64,000 nucleotides of DNA from Auanema rhodensis (lineage: Eukaryota > Animalia > Nematoda): NCBI GenBank assembly GCA_964057225.1, contig OZ059898.1, forward strand, positions 7,626,001 to 7,690,000, in the 5' to 3' direction. Both the position numbers and the translations under genes were made by a program. The notes beneath the pieces were generated by a model. That model searched no databases. It was not told where the DNA came from and was given only the letters and a program-made list of their open reading frames with translations. Positions 12,001 through 18,947 of the stretch are shown in pieces (the first letter of the stretch is position 1; each line of letters begins with the position of its first letter).

Positions 12001-13149
12001 ATGTTGATGAAGATCAACCCCAAAACGATAATGATTTTAACAGATTAATAAGTAAAGACCCTAATTCAGCTGAACCATGGATTAAGTATGATCCTCACTA
12101 ATTTGTTCATATTATTCAGTTTTTTTAGGTATATGTCATTCTTCTTGGAGAAGAACGATTTAGAAAAGGCCAGAGCTACTGCTGAGAGAGCATTAACTGC
12201 TATTCATTATCGGTATACATATTATGAAATTTTGTTAACTTATATATATATATATATATATATTGCAGGGAGGAGGCCGAAATATCAAATATGTGGACAG
12301 CTTACTTGAATATGGAAGTTGCTTTTGGTGATATGTCCACTGCCCGATCAGTTTTTGAGAAATCTTGTCAAAATGCTGACTCGTTGAAGATGCACAAACA
12401 GATGGCATTGATTCTTGCCAACAATGACAAGATTGAAGTCTGTTTTCTTCATATAATACTTACTAGTTTGCTGTTTTTATAGGAAGCTGATGAAATTTAC
12501 GACACTATGATTAAAAAGTTCCGAGCATCCAGTGATGATGTATGGGCAATGTATGCTACTCATTTAATGAACACAGAAAGAGTTCAAAAGGGCAGAGATC
12601 TGCTGCAGAGAGCTCTTAGCAGTATTCCAAAAGCTCGACGTAAGTTTGTTACTACTTTACTTTTATTTCCCTGAGCTGTTTAGACTGTGAACTGATTACC
12701 AAGTTTGCTCAACTAGAGTTCAAAAAGGGTGACGCCGAGAAAGGTCGCACTTTGTTTGAAAGCTTGGTATGTAATTTTATTTTTGTATGTTCTAACTTTT
12801 ATTATATAGATAACTGCATATCCCAAAAAAACAGATATTGTATTAGTTTATGTTGATATTATTGTCAAACACTCTGGAATTGAGGATGCCAGGTTTGAAT
12901 ACTTATTTAACTCTAATTACTATTTCATTTAATTGTTTTAGAGCTATTTTGGATAGGGCATGCAATTTACGCATCAGTATGCACAAGCTTCGTCCAATGT
13001 TTAAAAAATGGATGGAACTGGAAGAAAGATATGGAGATGAGAAATCGCAAGCTTTGGTTAGTTGAATTATATATACACACTCTACATTATATTTCTAGGT
13101 GCGCACCATGGCTGAAAAATGTGTTAAAGATATTGTTGAAAATTTATAA
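6028..13149 (+). CDS. RRP5: rRNA biogenesis protein RRP5/PDCD11 (let-716-like); S1 repeats plus C-terminal HAT/TPR repeats, many short introns
   Basis: N-terminal EEDFPRG, several S1-like exons (GRLHISE, KGYLAHEFACD), and C-terminal DFNRLISKDPNSAEPWIKYMSFFLE...ARATAERAL, IWTAYLNME, KFAQLEFKKGDAEKGRTLFE, FKKWMELEERYGD. Confidence 0.93.
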
Positions 13150-13355
13150 AAACGCAACTATTTGTTGAATTTGTTACCAAATTGTTATTGTTATCATTGT
13201 TTTGTTTATATGAGACTAGTTGTTACCGTTGTTCTTGTTTTCGGAATACATAAATATATCTTTTTTTTTCTGTTTTTTTTAATTACGGTAAAATATCCGA
13301 TTATTTCTATTTCATATTTGTATACAGAATAACAATATAAACAAGTTTAAGTTCA

Positions 13356-14428
13356 ATGCCGATCGGTTGCACAAAGAAGGAGTCTAGGCCGACAGATCAA
13401 CAAGATATCGAAAGCAAGTTAAAAAGTTTGCGGAACCGTTTTGGTAATCATTTTCACTATCATAAAGTTTATCGAACTTGTATTAGCCATGAACTCAGGA
13501 ATGAACGAAATCATTCCTAATCTTTTTCTTGGAGGATTGCGTGATGCGACAGATATACATCAAATAGCTAAAAATAAAATCGAGGTTAGTTTTAACTGCT
13601 TTGGATTTTGAATAATTTATGTTCTGTTATTAACTTTCAAATTTAGTATGTTCTTTCAATACATGATATGAATATAGAATATGTATCACAAGCTAACTTA
13701 AAAATTAAAAAAATTCGTATAGCTGATTCACCTTCAGAGAATATAGCCCAATATTTTTCTGAAGCTATACAGTTTATTCATGAGGCTCGTATCAAAGGAG
13801 GTAGTATTCATTGCCTACATTCATTTTTCAAAAATTCGTTTAGCATCTGTTGTTGTACATTGTCTTGCTGGGGTATCTCGTAGTGCAACCATTGTCGCTG
13901 CTTATCTTATCACCGTTTGTGGATTAACATTTTATAATGCTTTATCATTCACATCTTCGAAACGACCTGCGGTCAATCCAAATTTTGGTTTCAGGATGCA
14001 ACTCTCGAAGTTTGAAAAAGCTGTTAGTGAACATTGAAATTTTGTATTAATTAGTTTTCCTTTAGCCAGCACATCAGGAACGGAATCGTCTCAGAGAACT
14101 CTTTGGGGCAGCTGTGTTTGATCGTCAATGGCAGTTAGATCGTATAGCCACTCGAGTAAAGGTTGGTTCGCGCTGTGTTATGTCCTGGTGAGTGCTGTCT
14201 CGTTATGCTGCAAAGTCTTCGTACAAATTATTTTTGCTACTAACAGTTAACAAACATTTTTGCTTTTCCATGCACGTTTGACTATATTAACTTTTTTTTG
14301 AGCTTTTTGTCTCATTATGAAAAAGTTTACAGATCGTCACCCAAAACAGTACAATTTCTAATACCAATGATTCTTCAGTTACTTGTGATGAGAGTTCTCC
14401 ACCTGGTTCTGAATTTTCCACTTCATGA
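13356..14428 (+). CDS. Atypical dual-specificity phosphatase (DUSP22/DUSP15-like) with alternative C-termini
   Basis: MNSGMNEIIPNLFLGGLRDA, IADSPSENIAQYFSEAIQFIHEAR, catalytic VHCLAGVSRSATIVAAYL, RPAVNPNFGFRMQL. Two donors (14162 and 14188) can join the acceptor at 14332. Confidence 0.9.
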
Positions 14429-14707
14429 CATTATTTTTATTTGATTTTCTATGACTCTTAAAGTTTTCTGTATATACTTTATACATAATTTTAATATGTA
14501 TATAGATATTGTATATATTTTTGTCTTGCATAGTTTACTTATAATTTTTTGAGCTTATGTTGTGATTCTCAGGTTTTTTTAAATATAATATGTATAATAA
14601 ACTGCTTCTCATTTTTACGATGGGGGTAAGAAAATAAGAAAATGGTTGCTATCGAAACTACTTCATCTATTTGCAATTTCTTAATTCTGAATGGATCTTA
14701 GGTGAGG

Positions 14708-17700
14708 ATGTCTATTGACTCTGATATCGAAAACAATTCTACTAAAAAGTGAGAAAATAGGTTTCATTGCAAATCGTTTTTATACTGTTGCTATAGATCC
14801 AAGAGTTCACGAAGGGAAAGCAAGTGCTCAAACACCCAGGTGAGATTAGATCTGCACATCTAGATAACTGCATAATTCAGAGAAAGTCAAATGAGTTCCA
14901 CAAAAGCAGAGGTGGAATTAAACGAAAATATGAAAATGTATTTAATTGTTTTATTTTCTTTTAGTAAAAAGTCATGTTTAAGGACACAGATGAGAAAGAA
15001 GATGAACAAAATAATATTAGTGAGAAAGGCAAAGTAAAACGAGTCAAGCTGAGTGTTTGTTTTCAAATTTTATTCCATTGAAGAAATTGAAATAATTGTA
15101 GAATTCTTCGGGGAGAGATGAAATAAAACAATCTTCTGTAAATGAAACTATTACTGATGAGGGTTCTGATGATTCTCCTCTTATATTTTTCAAATCAAAG
15201 GTAAAATTTTATTATAGTTTTCTACCACCCCTCCGCCATGAATGAACAATCATAGAAGAACAGTTTTTTCAATTTATTCATTTTTTCTTGCAAACCAAGC
15301 TTAACTTTAGGATAATATAATAATGTCCAAAATGTGTCATTTGCTTCAGAAATCTGGCTTCACTTCACAAAATAAGAAGAACACGGCAGATTCTGATTCC
15401 GAAAATGAGGAAGAAAAGGACTTGAAAAGAGGTGTTTCTGAGGAGAAGTCGGCTTCTGCCCAGAAGGTGTGTGAGGTGACTTGTGTCCAAAAAAATTAAT
15501 AATTTCAGAAGGAATCTCCTGTCACGAAGAAAAAATCAATTTCGAAAGAAATGATTACGTCAGACGATGATTCTGACGACGATAATTTGGCTACATTAGC
15601 CAAGAAAGGGAGTGACTTGAAAGTATTTATATTTTCTTAGTTTTATTAATACTTACCCAAGTTTAGAAGCAGCAACCGGCTGTCCAAAAATCAAAAAAGA
15701 ATGATACAAATGTGCGAAGATCTAAGAAAATATCTGATTCTGATTCCGAAAATGAGGAAGAAAAGGACTTGAAAAGAGGTGTTTCTGATGAGAAGTCGGC
15801 TTCTGCCCAGAAGGTGTGTGAAGTGACTTGTGTCCAAAAAATTAATAATTTCAGAAGGAATCTCCTGTCACGAAGAAAAAATCAATTTCGAAAGAAATGA
15901 TTACGTCAGACGATGATTCTGACGACGATAATTTGGCTACATTAGCCAAGAAAGGGAGTGACTTGAAAGTATTTATATTTTCTTAGTTTTATTAATACTT
16001 ACCCAAGTTTAGAAGCAGCAACCGGCTGTCCAAAAATCAAAAAAGAATGATACAAATGTGCGAAGATCTAAGAAAATATCTGATTCGGATTCCGAAAATG
16101 AGGAAGAAAAGGACTTGAAAAGAGGTGTTTCTGATGAGAAGCCGGCTTCTGCCCAGAAGGTGTGTGAAGTGACTTGTGTCCAAAAAAATTAATAATTTCA
16201 GAAGGAATCTCCTGTCACGAAGAAAAAATCAATTTCGAAAGAAATGATTACGTCAGACGATGATTCTGACGACGATAATTTGGCTACATTAGCCAAGAAA
16301 GGGAGTGACTTGAAAGTATTTATATTTTCTTAGTTTTATTAATACTTACCCAAGTTTAGAAGCAGCAACCGGCTGTCCAAAAATCAAAAAAGAATGATAC
16401 AAATGTGCGAAGATCTAAGAAAATATCTGATTCTGATTCCGAAAATGAGGAAGAAAAGGACTTGAAAAGAGGTGTTTCTGATGAGAAGCCGGCTTCTGCC
16501 CAGAAGGTGTGTGAAGTGACTTGTGTCCAAAAAAATTAATAATTTCAGAAGGAATCTCCTGTCACGAAGAAAAAATCAATTTCGAAAGAAATGATTACGT
16601 CAGACGATGATTCTGACGACGATAATTTGGCTACATTAGCCAAGAAAGGGAGTGACTTGAAAGTATTTATATTTTCTTAGTTTTATTAATACTTACCCAA
16701 GTTTAGAAGCAGCAACCGGCTGTCCAAAAATCAAAAAAGAATGATACAAATGTGCGAAGATCTAAGAAAATATCTGATTCTGATTCCGAAAATGAGGAAG
16801 AAAAGGACTTGAAAAGAGGTGTTTCTGATGAGAAGCCGGCTTCTGCCCAGAAGGTGTGTGAAGTGACTTGTGTCCAAAAAATTAATAATTTCAGAAGGAA
16901 TCTCCTGTCACGAAGAAAAAATCAATTTCGAAAGAAATGATTACGTCAGACGATGATTCTGACGACGATAATTTGGCTACATTAGCCAAGAAAGGGAGTG
17001 ACTTGAAAGTATTTATATTTTCTTAGTTTTATTAATACTTACCCAAGTTTAGAAGCAGCAACCGGCTGTCCAAAAATCAAAAAAGAATGATACAAATGTG
17101 CGAAGATCTAAGAAAATATCTGATTCTGATTCCGAAAATGAGGAAGAAAAGGACTTGAAAAGAGGTGTTTCTGATGAGAAGTCGGCTTCTGCCCAGAAGG
17201 TGTGTGAAGTGACTTGTGTCCAAAAAATTAATAATTTCAGAAGGAATCTCCTGTCACGAAGAAAAAATCAATTTCGAAAGAAATGATTACGTCAGACGAT
17301 GATTCTGACGACGATAATTTGGCTACATTAGCCAAGAAAGGGAGTGACTTGAAAGTATTTATATTTTCTTAGTTTTATTAATACTTACCCAAGTTTAGAA
17401 GCAGCAACCGGCTGTCCAAAAATCAAAAAAGAATGATACAAATGTGCGAAGATCTAAGAAAATATCTGATTCTGATTCCGAAAATGAGGAAGAAAAGGAC
17501 TTGAAAAGAGGTGTTTCTGATGAGAAGTCGGCTTCTGCCCAGAAGGTGTGTGAAGTGACTTGTGTCCAAAAAATTAATAATTTCAGAAGGAATCTCCTGT
17601 CACGAAGAAAAAATCAATTTCGAAAGAAATGATTACGTCAGACGATGATTCTGACGACGATAATTTGGCTACATTAGCCAAGAAAGGGAGTGACTTGAAA

Positions 17701-18947
17701 GTATTTATATTTTCTTAGTTTTATTAATACTTACCCAAGTTTAGAAGCAGCAACCGGCTGTCCAAAAATCAAAAAAGAATGATACAAATGTGCGAAGATC
17801 TAAGAAAATATGTGATTCTGATTCCGAAAATGAGGAAGAAAAGGACTTGAAAAGAGGTGTTTCTGATGAGAAGCCGGCTTCTGCCCAAAAGGTGTGAAGT
17901 TATTTTCGAAAATATGATATTCTGTGTTTTAGAAGAAAAACCCAAATAGCTTCGATCGCAAAAATGAATGTACCTCAGAAAAAAGTTATGCATCAAAACA
18001 TCAGGTTCTGTTCAAAACTGTTTACTTTAATTTTGTATTTATTTAGTCAATTAAAAAGCTTGTGGATGATATTCAAAGATCTGATTCCGATAGTTCTATC
18101 AGTAGTGTAGAAGATACAATTCCTTTCAAGAAAAATAAAGTTAGCGTTTTAATTTAACTCTTTATGTGTATCCTTATTTACTAAGGATAACACTGAAGAA
18201 ATTAAAGATGGAAAGTCTGACGATTTAAGTTCTGATTGCTCGAATTCAAGCTCAGCTATAGAAGAATTGAAGCAGGTTTCATATTCTAATGATTCAATAT
18301 TCCACATTTTAACATTCAGAACAAGAGCTTCGATAAAAATAAGGAGGAAAGTGCAAAAAAGGTATTTTTTCTTTCGTAAGATAAATCTTATATTTATTAT
18401 GTATTAGCATCCTGCTGAACTTAGGCTAGCTAAATTGAAAAAAATAGTTTTTGCAGCGGGGTTCAGGTTAGTATTAGTACAGCTATATAATATTTTGTTC
18501 TTATGTAGATTGAATTATAAAAAAATGTTTGCCGACATTACCGAAGTAAAAAGACAAATTAAAATTTTGGAACAACAACTAATGGATAAAGGATTAAAAC
18601 GTTAATTAGAGTTTAAGAAAACACTTAATGTTAAATGTTTAGCTCCCTACACATTGGAAGGAGCGAAGTCATATAAATTACAGAAAGAAGAAGATTTTGA
18701 ATTGACCGAATTAGCAAAAAATGAAATTTTTGAAAGTTCAGAAAGTAGTATGTTTTGTTTCACTCGTCTAAACTTTGCTGTTCTTATACCAGAAAGAAGA
18801 GTTACTCGAAGCCAACGTGATCACGTTGAAGTTATAAAACCCAAGAAAGTTCTGTTGTCTAGTGACGAAGAAGAGGAAGAAGTTGAAAAACCCAACTTTA
18901 GTTTTAGCCATTTGTCAGGCATTGTGGATACTGAAGCATCAGATTAA
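14708..18947 (+). CDS. HIRIP3-like acidic/basic low-complexity protein with a C-terminal CHZ-type histone-chaperone region, expanded by an internal tandem array
   Basis: C-terminal exons read HPAELRLAKLKKIVFAAGFRLNYKKMFADITEVKRQIKILEQQLMDKGLKPPYTLEGAKSYKLQKEEDFELTELAKNEIFE..RRVTRSQR, which resembles the conserved HIRIP3 C-terminus. The N-terminal part is S/D/E/K-rich. Confidence 0.7.
15389..17896 (+). repeat. Tandem array of 346/347-bp units (about 7.2 copies); each unit is a 147-nt exon, 41/42-nt intron, 114-nt exon and 44-nt intron
   Basis: The 147-nt exon starts at 15667, 16013, 16360, 16707, 17053, 17399 and 17745. Copies are nearly identical. Confidence 0.97.

What the first reader, a model, noticed from the sequence alone, without database searches (positions are those of the whole stretch)
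14150..14428. Splice-switchable CAAX box on a DUSP22-like phosphatase, with the stop codon assembled across an exon junction
Seen in sequence: the penultimate exon reads ...ATRVK|VGSRCVMS-TG| and has two donors, AAG|gttggt (14162) and the consensus TG|gtgagt (14188). The next acceptor is tttacag|ATC (exon from 14333). The downstream donor joins TG+A into TGA immediately after Cys-Val-Met-Ser, so the protein ends ...RIATRVKVGSRCVMS*. The upstream donor skips the CVMS segment and opens a different frame, ...RVKIVTQNSTISNTNDSSVTCDESSPPGSEFSTS*, an acidic Ser/Thr tail. Unspliced RNA ends CVMSW*, which destroys the motif. Established: CaaX with X=Ser is a farnesyltransferase substrate, and nearby basic residues aid membrane binding. 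Among DUSPs, PRL phosphatases are the classic prenylated group. Inference: a 26-nt donor shift toggles the enzyme between a farnesylated membrane form and a soluble form. The stop sits at the last junction, so it should escape NMD.
Basis: partly seen in the sequence, partly recalled or inferred. Interest (0 to 1): 0.8.

Follow-up and report, generated by a model that had tools for sequence, protein, structure and literature searches.

The report
Splice-switched lipid-anchor tail on nematode DUSP22
A nematode DUSP22-type phosphatase gene makes two mRNAs by shifting one splice donor 26 bases: one ends in a CaaX lipid-anchor motif whose stop codon is completed by the splice, the other in a longer tail without it. 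The same design is kept in distant parasitic nematodes.

Summary
At 14162 and 14188 there are two GT donors that share the acceptor before 14333. They give tails ...RVKVGSRCVMS* (stop = TG|A across the junction) and ...RVKIVTQ...EFSTS*. The unspliced form gives CVMSW*.

RNA contigs from four public runs (one study) carry both predicted junctions. 14187^14333 is in all four runs and 14161^14333 in three. One run assembled only the CaaX form.

The design recurs in other nematodes. Haemonchus contortus and Ancylostoma ceylanicum genomic DNA, and two strongylid transcript contigs, all have AAG|GTTGGT..., a Cys at position -4, aliphatic a1 and a2, then TG|GTAAGT and a next exon starting with A. Their motifs are CAVI, CAVV and CAVL. 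Mesorhabditis belari ends in CALM.

The protein is a DUSP22/DUSP15-type phosphatase. Its animal relatives start MG.GM, the N-myristoylation site. Nematode orthologues bury that site behind an N-terminal extension.

Best reading: a conserved, probably regulated, alternative 5' splice site adds or removes a prenylation signal. Prenylation and membrane binding are inferred, not shown. This is a new member of a known kind, since splice-switched CaaX isoforms and prenylated phosphatases are both known. I found no report of it for DUSP22.

The parts
13342..13443 (+).
   Evidence: Joint 13443^13487 (GT..AG) in all four runs; in-frame translation
13487..13584 (+). Exon 2: ...AMNSGMNEIIPNLFLGGLRD..., holding the buried remnant of the MG.GM myristoylation start of other animals' DUSP22
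   Evidence: comparison with MGNGMNK starts
13647..13800 (+). Exon 3: includes the D-loop region (IRIADSPSENI)
   Evidence: Joints; translation; Pfam DSPc
13844..14022 (+). Exon 4: catalytic P-loop VHCLAGVSRS and N-loop NPNFGF
14066..14161 (+). Exon 5, the part common to both isoforms, ending ...DRIATRVK; upstream donor AAG|GTTGGT directly after 14161
   Evidence: joint 14161^14333 in runs X1-X3
14162..14187 (+). 26-nt alternative exon extension encoding VGSRCVMS plus TG. The CaaX codons are at 14174-14185. TG at 14186-14187 is completed to TGA by the A at 14333. Downstream donor CTG|GTGAGT directly after 14187
   Evidence: joint 14187^14333 in runs X1-X4, with a 780-nt contig and 121 nt on the shorter side in X4
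14188..14332 (+). Intron removed in both forms (145 nt from the downstream donor, 171 nt from the upstream one). It is 3-4 times longer than the 13 neighbouring introns (41-62 nt). Also seen retained in RNA contigs of X1-X3
14333..14428 (+). Last exon, coding part for the long isoform (IVTQNSTISNTNDSSVTCDESSPPGSEFSTS, stop at 14426-14428). In the CaaX isoform only its first base is coding and the rest is 3' UTR
14429..14615 (+). 3' UTR; AATAAA at 14596-14601; RNA contigs end at 14594-14615

Best explanation
The locus 13342-14615 (+) is the DUSP22/DUSP15-type dual-specificity phosphatase gene of a rhabditid nematode. Its closest protein in the databases comes from Auanema sp. JU1783, at 77% identity. 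The penultimate exon has two competing 5' splice sites 26 nt apart that join the same last exon. Use of the downstream site keeps eight extra codons, VGSRCVMS. Because 26 = 2 mod 3, the exon then ends in TG, which the first base of the last exon (A) completes to TGA. The protein therefore ends exactly in Cys-Val-Met-Ser, a canonical CaaX box on a short flexible tail next to basic residues. Use of the upstream site skips these codons and reads the last exon in frame, giving a 33-residue Ser/Thr/acidic tail with no lipidation signal. Shown here: both mRNAs exist, their ratio differs between samples, and the layout is conserved in other Rhabditina (Cys at -4, aliphatic a1/a2, TG|GT donor, next exon starting with A). 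Inferred: the CaaX form is prenylated (farnesyl here; geranylgeranyl-type X in strongylids) and is recruited to membranes. On this reading the splice choice sets how much of the phosphatase is membrane-bound. This would functionally replace the N-terminal myristoyl anchor of other animals' DUSP22/DUSP15, which nematode orthologues lack.
For: 1. The sequence and translations are exactly as described.
2. RNA contigs of four runs show the joint 14187^14333 in X1-X4 (depths 13.8, 11.1, 5.6, 30.9) and 14161^14333 in X1-X3 (24.2, 8.8, 10.1). In X1-X3 the main contig stops at the branch point 14161.
3. All 13 neighbouring introns are spliced out and intergenic depth is at or near zero, so these runs are RNA.
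4. Orthologues end ...KVGRSSCAVV...EVGHSSCAVL and ...NYCALM. One Ancylostoma duodenale prediction ends CAVVW, the unspliced reading.
5. In genomic DNA, Haemonchus has AAG|GTTGGT...TGCTGTGCCGTTATTTG|GTAAGT with next exon cag|ATC, and A. ceylanicum has the same layout with next exon tag|AGT.
6. Spliced transcripts from two other strongylid-type samples read ...TGTGCTGTTGTTTG|ATTGG and ...TGTGCAGTTCTTTG|AATGA. The long-tail frame continues open behind the stop.
7. The extension is 26 nt here and 29 nt in strongylids, both 2 mod 3.
8. Of four Haemonchus/Ancylostoma differences in the extension, two are synonymous and two are conservative.
9. Pfam DSPc scores E=4e-31. The best solved relatives are DUSP22 and then DUSP15.
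10. DUSP22 and DUSP15 are myristoylated at Gly2, and this is needed for JNK activation (PMC13090511). 12 of 15 non-nematode relatives start MG.GM. Only one of 59 nematode entries starts MG, a 455-residue Plectus prediction whose phosphatase domain begins about 200 residues in, so its Gly2 is not the ancestral site.
11. An AlphaFold model of the strongylid CaaX isoform has a confident catalytic domain and an unstructured last six residues with pLDDT below 50.
Against: There is no protein-level evidence of any kind: prenylation, membrane binding and activity are untested. The RNA evidence comes from one study and from assembled contigs, not raw reads. The upstream-donor joint rests on bubble contigs with 28 specific letters plus 2 shared on the shorter side, just under the tool's 31-letter rule, and contig depth is a poor measure of isoform ratio. 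The X residue is not conserved (S, V, I, L, M), so the lipid type would differ between species. The CaaX alternative was not seen in Pristionchus pacificus (GRSSSAT|GT, no Cys), Caenorhabditis auriculariae or the filarial Acanthocheilonema viteae, so it is lineage-restricted. The Mesorhabditis gene structure could not be fetched. The strongylid cases are close relatives, so there are about three independent lineages, not eight.
Confidence: 0.72

Rival explanations
1. The short form is a real mRNA, but the terminal CVMS is not a working prenylation signal. On this reading the tandem donors only serve to truncate the protein by removing the long regulatory tail, and the Cys is incidental or used otherwise, for example for palmitoylation or redox.
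For: X varies among species, and the long tail carries its own widely conserved C-terminal [FY]ID[DEQ] motif (29 of 59 nematode entries). Dropping that tail could itself be the point. No biochemical data exist.
Against: A plain truncation needs no Cys exactly four residues from the end. Yet the Cys at -4 with aliphatic a1/a2 is kept in the window, in strongylids and in Mesorhabditis, while the surrounding residues and even the length of the extension change. All five motifs fit the published FTase or GGTase-I consensus (PMC11304957).
Confidence: 0.15
2. The downstream-donor product is unproductive splicing: noise, or a regulated dead end that lowers the dose of the long isoform. The apparent conservation would then reflect splice-signal constraints on the GTTGGT...TG|GT segment.
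For: The upstream donor hexamer GTTGGT is identical from the window to strongylids. An intron-retained form is also present in X1-X3.
Against: In run X4 the CaaX form is the only one assembled, and at the same depth as the rest of the gene (30.9). The stop lies on the last junction, so no exon junction follows it. Between Haemonchus and Ancylostoma the segment changes mostly at synonymous or conservative positions. In Mesorhabditis the extension is 18 codons of unrelated sequence and still ends in CaaX.
Confidence: 0.08
3. The two junctions reflect allelic or strain differences, or assembly artefacts, rather than alternative splicing within one animal.
For: The evidence is contigs from one study. 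The bubble contigs are short.
Against: No base differences from the window were reported in any run. Both junctions use canonical GT..AG on the same genomic sequence. Both occur together in three runs. Other species' annotations and transcripts show both forms independently.
Confidence: 0.03

Closest known systems
Human/vertebrate DUSP22 (JSP-1/JKAP) and DUSP15 (VHY)
   Same: Same catalytic subfamily: DUSP22 and DUSP15 are the best solved relatives, and DUSP22-named proteins are the best non-nematode hits. The P-loop HCLAGVSRS and N-loop NPNFGF are present. Both are small lipid-anchored phosphatases without a MAPK-docking domain.
   Different: The vertebrate enzymes are anchored by N-terminal myristoylation at Gly2 (PMC13090511). 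The nematode gene has an N-terminal extension with no Gly2 and instead offers a C-terminal CaaX, and only in one splice form.
PRL phosphatases (PTP4A1-3)
   Same: [quoted passage not shown]
   Different: They belong to a different subfamily: no PTP4A chain is among the 60 PDB sequences matched at E<=1e-10. Their CaaX is constitutive, not splice-dependent.
Splice-dependent CaaX isoforms: INF2-CAAX/non-CAAX, ZAP-L/ZAP-S, CDC42 variants, KRAS4A/4B, lamins with and without CaaX
   Same: Alternative splicing decides whether the protein ends in a prenylation motif and so where it sits in the cell (papers listed).
   Different: These are unrelated proteins. As far as I recall (not checked here), they usually use alternative last exons. 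Here the switch is a 26-29-nt shift of a 5' splice site, with the stop codon assembled across the junction.

Membership tests
DUSP22/DUSP15 subfamily of atypical dual-specificity phosphatases | DSPc catalytic domain with the HCxxGxxR(S/T) P-loop | tested here: met
   Pfam PF00782 E=3.9e-31 over residues 12-142; VHCLAGVSRS in exon 4
DUSP22/DUSP15 subfamily of atypical dual-specificity phosphatases | Closest similarity to DUSP22/DUSP15 rather than to other DUSPs | tested here: met
   The 77%-identical Auanema orthologue P0001 hits DUSP22 chains first (E=5.7e-36) and then DUSP15, with MKPs 4-5 orders of magnitude or more weaker (best 1e-27). A profile of nematode orthologues finds DUSP22-named proteins as the best non-nematode hits. 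This was tested through a proxy and a profile, not with the window protein itself.
DUSP22/DUSP15 subfamily of atypical dual-specificity phosphatases | N-terminal MGxxx myristoylation site (Gly2) | tested here: not met
   The RNA-supported start is MPIGC.... Only one of 59 nematode entries starts MG, a 455-residue Plectus prediction whose phosphatase domain begins about 200 residues in. 12 of 15 non-nematode relatives start MG.GM.
CaaX prenylated proteins | Cys exactly four residues from the C-terminus, with aliphatic a1 and a2 | tested here: met
   Isoform B ends C-V-M-S. Orthologues end CAVV, CAVI, CAVL and CALM.
CaaX prenylated proteins | X residue accepted by FTase or GGTase-I | tested here: inconclusive
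   By published rules, S falls in the FTase class and V, I, L, M fit Caa[L/F/I/M/V] for GGTase-I (PMC11304957). No predictor or assay was available. The yeast CXXX tables held were cut off before CVMS.
CaaX prenylated proteins | Motif on an exposed, flexible C-terminus | tested here: met
   In the AlphaFold model of the strongylid CaaX isoform P0002, the last helix ends at residue 214 and residues 220-225 have pLDDT below 50 with no secondary structure. This is a proxy, not the window protein.
CaaX prenylated proteins | Covalent isoprenoid on the Cys, followed by aaX cleavage and methylation | not testable with these tools
   This needs metabolic labelling or mass spectrometry.
PRL/PTP4A prenylated phosphatases | Sequence membership in the PTP4A family | tested here: not met
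   No PTP4A chain is among the 60 PDB sequences matched at E<=1e-10.
Alternative 5' splice-site isoform switch | Two mRNAs using different donors with the same acceptor | tested here: met
   Joints 14161^14333 and 14187^14333, both GT..AG
Alternative 5' splice-site isoform switch | Regulated use (by tissue, stage or sex) | tested here: inconclusive
   X4 shows only the downstream-donor form, while X1-X3 show both forms plus intron retention. The sample identities are coded and contig depths are rough.

The most novel reading that the evidence does not exclude
In Rhabditina nematodes, including the parasites Haemonchus and Ancylostoma, the DUSP22 orthologue lost the ancestral N-myristoyl anchor and re-acquired membrane targeting as a splice-regulated C-terminal prenyl anchor. 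On this reading, membrane recruitment of a JNK-pathway phosphatase is set by a regulated 26-29-nt donor choice that differs between samples (by sex, stage or morph). This would be an evolutionary swap of lipid anchor from one end of the protein to the other, turning a constitutive anchor into a switchable one.
Probability: 0.4. Interest if true: 0.65.

Novelty: new member of a known kind. Interest (0 to 1): 0.52.

Why it matters
DUSP22 and DUSP15 are described as the only PTP-family members anchored by N-myristoylation, and that anchor is required for JNK activation (PMC13090511). The nematode orthologues lack it. A conserved, splice-dependent CaaX would show how the same need, membrane proximity, was met by another lipid at the other end of the protein and made adjustable. 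The locus gives a compact, testable case of localisation control by a tandem 5' splice site. It also corrects gene models in several nematode genomes: predictions ending CAVVW, or reading through the donor, are artefacts of missing this junction. It adds a phosphatase to the predicted nematode prenylome. No C. elegans orthologue appeared among the best 120 hits. That is weak evidence, but it may explain why the feature has not been described.

Tried and rejected
1. Genomic loci could not be fetched for Auanema sp. JU1783 (P0001), Mesorhabditis belari (P0014), M. spiculigera (P0072) and Nippostrongylus (P0059): no exact product was on record. The layout in the nearest relative and in Mesorhabditis is therefore untested.

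2. In Pristionchus pacificus, the peptide GRSSSAT resembles the strongylid GRSSCAV, but it has no Cys and the exon ends ...ACG|GTACGA. I did not count it as a CaaX form.

3. The Diploscapter annotation (P0015) seems to read through an intron and was uninformative.

4. Yeast whole-CXXX screens (PMC10320760, PMC11304957): the stored tables are cut off before CV.., so CVMS is absent. The Ydj1 enrichment factors for CAVV, CAVI, CAVL and CALM (0.6-1.6) come from a reporter that disfavours canonical cleaved motifs. I did not use them as evidence.

5. Literature searches linking DUSP22, or dual-specificity phosphatases generally, to CaaX or farnesylation, and for a C. elegans prenylome, found nothing relevant.

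6. The search of earlier findings returned only unrelated notes.

7. The spliced protein has no reference form. In some searches I entered it as letters copied (206 and 183 residues). All later steps used ids. The large representative search was not used.

Full report
**What is in the sequence**

Reading 12800-15200 and translating the candidate exons gives a six-exon gene on the + strand:
- exon 1: 13342/ATG 13356 to 13443
- exon 2: 13487-13584
- exon 3: 13647-13800
- exon 4: 13844-14022
- exon 5: 14066-14161 or 14066-14187
- exon 6: 14333 to about 14615

The penultimate exon has two GT donors, AAG|GTTGGT after 14161 and CTG|GTGAGT after 14187. Both face the acceptor TTTACAG|ATC at 14333.

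- Downstream donor: ...RIATRVKVGSRCVMS, with the stop made of TG (14186-14187) plus A (14333).
- Upstream donor: ...RVKIVTQNSTISNTNDSSVTCDESSPPGSEFSTS, with the stop at 14426-14428.
- No splicing: ...CVMSW.

The product is a dual-specificity phosphatase. Pfam DSPc scores E=3.9e-31, and the P-loop VHCLAGVSRS and N-loop NPNFGF are intact.

**RNA evidence**

One search for public runs found four runs of a single 2019 study that hold the stretch. They were labelled only as "RNA?". Laid on 12400-15250, their contigs have every one of the 13 neighbouring introns removed at GT..AG, and depth is at or near zero between genes. So they are RNA.

- Joint 14187^14333, the CaaX form, is present in all four runs at contig depths 13.8, 11.1, 5.6 and 30.9.
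- Joint 14161^14333 is present in three runs at depths 24.2, 8.8 and 10.1.
- A contig with the intron retained (14158-14360) is present in the same three runs at depths 9.7, 8.65 and 4.5.
- In X1-X3 the main gene contig stops at 14161, as expected at a branch in an assembly graph.

Caveats: these are contigs, their depths are rough, the bubble contigs carry only 28-29 specific letters per side, and all runs come from one study.

The same data show the joint 13443^13487 in all four runs.

**Local intron context**

The 13 neighbouring introns confirmed are 41-62 nt long. The alternative intron is 145 or 171 nt. The upstream donor GTTGGT is not unusually weak for this gene, since two of its other donors (after 13584 and 14022) are GTTAGT.

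**Relatives**

A word search with the spliced protein found Auanema sp. JU1783 as the closest entry at 77% identity. Strongylid nematodes follow at 54-58%, then Mesorhabditis, Diploscapter, filariae and one Caenorhabditis (C. auriculariae). The window is therefore from a rhabditid nematode near Auanema.

The C-termini fall into two groups.
- Short forms end ...TRSKVGRSSCAVV (two transcript contigs), ...EVGHSSCAVL (Parelaphostrongylus tenuis and one transcript contig) and ...NYCALM (Mesorhabditis belari). One Ancylostoma duodenale prediction ends ...CAVVW, the unspliced reading.
- Long forms branch off right after the same Lys (TRSK|I..., TRSK|S...).

**Genomic and transcript checks of the layout**

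- Haemonchus contortus (L001) has TCCAAG|GTTGGT CGT TCC TGC TGT GCC GTT ATT TG|GTAAGT, with next exon cag|ATCGAC.
- Ancylostoma ceylanicum (L003) has AAG|GTTGGT CGT TCG AGC TGT GCG GTT GTT TG|GTAAGT, with next exon tag|AGTGAT.
- Two spliced transcript contigs from other samples read ...TGT GCT GTT GTT TG|A TTG G... (L002) and ...TGT GCA GTT CTT TG|A ATG A... (L008). In each, the long-tail reading frame continues open behind the junction stop.

The extension is 26 nt here and 29 nt in strongylids, both 2 mod 3. The next exon always begins with A. The four Haemonchus/Ancylostoma differences inside the extension are two synonymous and two conservative changes (Cys to Ser at position -5, Ile to Val at X). 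The Mesorhabditis extension is 18 unrelated residues that still end in CaaX.

The invariant features are therefore the Cys at -4, aliphatic a1/a2, and termination right after X. This is the signature of selection on a CaaX box, in about three independent lineages: the window, Strongylida and Mesorhabditis.

**Where the alternative is not seen**

- Pristionchus pacificus has ...GRSSSAT|GTACGA with no Cys.
- C. auriculariae ends ...KVYFANGR in a single last exon.
- The filarial Acanthocheilonema viteae has no such alternative.

A profile search brought the nematode set to 59 entries. Five end in CaaX, one in CaaX-W, and 29 in a conserved [FY]ID[DEQHR] motif. That motif marks the long isoform from Plectus to filariae. 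The window's own long tail lacks it. No C. elegans orthologue appeared among the best 120 hits. That is only weak evidence of absence.

**Family and the lipid-anchor argument**

The Auanema orthologue's best solved relatives are human DUSP22 (E=5.7e-36) and DUSP15 (2e-31). MKP-type DUSPs come at 1e-27 or weaker, and no PRL/PTP4A chain is among the 60 PDB sequences matched at E<=1e-10.

[quoted passage not shown] Of 15 non-nematode relatives fetched, 12 start MG.GM, from Trichoplax and Hydra to mammals.

Nematode orthologues carry 25-55 extra N-terminal residues, so the old start survives only as an internal G-T-E-M, G-N-G-M or N-S-G-M. Only one of the 59 entries starts MG, a 455-residue Plectus prediction whose phosphatase domain begins about 200 residues in, so its Gly2 is not that site. 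It is my inference, not a demonstrated fact, that the CaaX isoform supplies the membrane anchor these enzymes lost.

**Is the motif plausible as a substrate?**

By published rules, X selects the enzyme. FTase accepts about half of the amino acids. GGTase-I accepts Leu and sometimes Phe, Ile, Met or Val (PMC11304957).
- CVMS resembles H-Ras CVLS (my knowledge) and falls in the farnesyl class.
- CAVV, CAVI and CAVL fit the geranylgeranyl consensus.
- CALM fits either.

So prenylatability is conserved, but not the lipid type. An AlphaFold model of the strongylid short isoform (mean pLDDT 86) has a confident catalytic domain and a last helix ending at residue 214. The final VGRSSCAVV is unstructured, with pLDDT below 50 for the last six residues. 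The motif should therefore be accessible. This model is a proxy, not the window protein.

**Mechanism, with what is shown and what is inferred**

Shown:
- Two donors share one acceptor, and two mRNAs plus a retained-intron form exist.
- The stop codon of the short form is assembled at the last exon junction.
- The layout is conserved.
- One sample contains essentially only the short form.

Inferred:
- The short form is prenylated, processed and membrane-bound, helped by the nearby Lys and Arg.
- The long form is soluble, or is directed elsewhere by its own tail.
- The choice is regulated.
- The short form escapes nonsense-mediated decay because no junction follows its stop. Its 3' UTR is about 280 nt, against about 190 nt for the long form.

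**Comparison with what is known**

Splice-dependent CaaX isoforms are well documented for INF2, ZAP, CDC42, KRAS and lamins. Prenylated phosphatases are known in the PRL group. Searches for DUSP22 with CaaX, and for dual-specificity phosphatases with farnesylation and alternative splicing, found nothing relevant, and neither did earlier notes of this scan. I therefore rate this as a new member of a known kind. It has an attractive evolutionary twist (the anchor moved from the N- to the C-terminus and became switchable) and a neat genomic device (a frame-shifting 26-29-nt donor shift with a junction-built stop).

**Limits**

There is no protein-level evidence. The RNA evidence is from contigs of one study. 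The nearest relative's locus and the Mesorhabditis locus could not be fetched. The spliced window protein had to be entered as letters because it has no reference.

Noticed in passing
window 13342-13443: An upstream coding exon of the phosphatase gene (MPIGCTKKES...NRF) is spliced to 13487 in all four RNA runs. The RNA contigs begin at 13342-13349, about 100 nt after the upstream gene's contigs end (13244).
   Followed up: yes
window 12400-13244, 13342-14615 and from about 14704; loci L001, L005, L006: An RRP5/PDCD11-like gene (S1 and HAT repeats) lies directly upstream of the DUSP22 orthologue here and also in Haemonchus, C. auriculariae and Pristionchus pacificus. In the window the three consecutive same-strand genes are only about 90-100 nt apart, the spacing typical of nematode operons. 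Trans-spliced leaders could not be checked from contigs.
   Followed up: partly
proteins P0004-P0005, P0016-P0021, P0058-P0077, P0116: The long isoform of the nematode DUSP22 orthologues ends in a strongly conserved C-terminal motif [FY]-I-D-[DEQHR] in 29 of 59 entries, from Plectus to filariae, ascarids, Pristionchus and strongylids. Its function is unknown. The window's long tail (…GSEFSTS) lacks it.
   Followed up: partly
window 14158-14360: Contigs with the alternative intron retained occur in runs X1-X3 at depths 4.5-9.7, far above the intergenic background (at most 1.4), and not in X4. The retained form would encode ...CVMSW and so destroy the CaaX box.
   Followed up: partly
window 15389-17896: There is a tandem array of 7.2 copies of a 346-bp unit, 99% identical, inside the next gene downstream. 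Each unit carries an open frame of the type ...SDSDSENEEEKDLKRGVSDEK.ASAQKVCEVTCVQK... This looks like a very recent expansion of an exon-plus-intron unit, or an assembly collapse or expansion.
   Followed up: no
L001 (Haemonchus contortus CP149425.1) 7963 and 14779: The penultimate exon with its CaaX extension occurs twice, identical over at least 110 nt and 6.8 kb apart, inside a 14.6-kb annotated gene. This is either a tandem duplication or an assembly artefact.
   Followed up: no
P0058 (Ancylostoma ceylanicum) and P0012 (A. duodenale): Public gene models mis-handle this junction. One reads ...CAVVW (intron read through to its in-frame stop). Another continues ...CAVVCMRSDVL... into a 358-aa product. 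Both would be corrected by the TG|A junction.
   Followed up: partly
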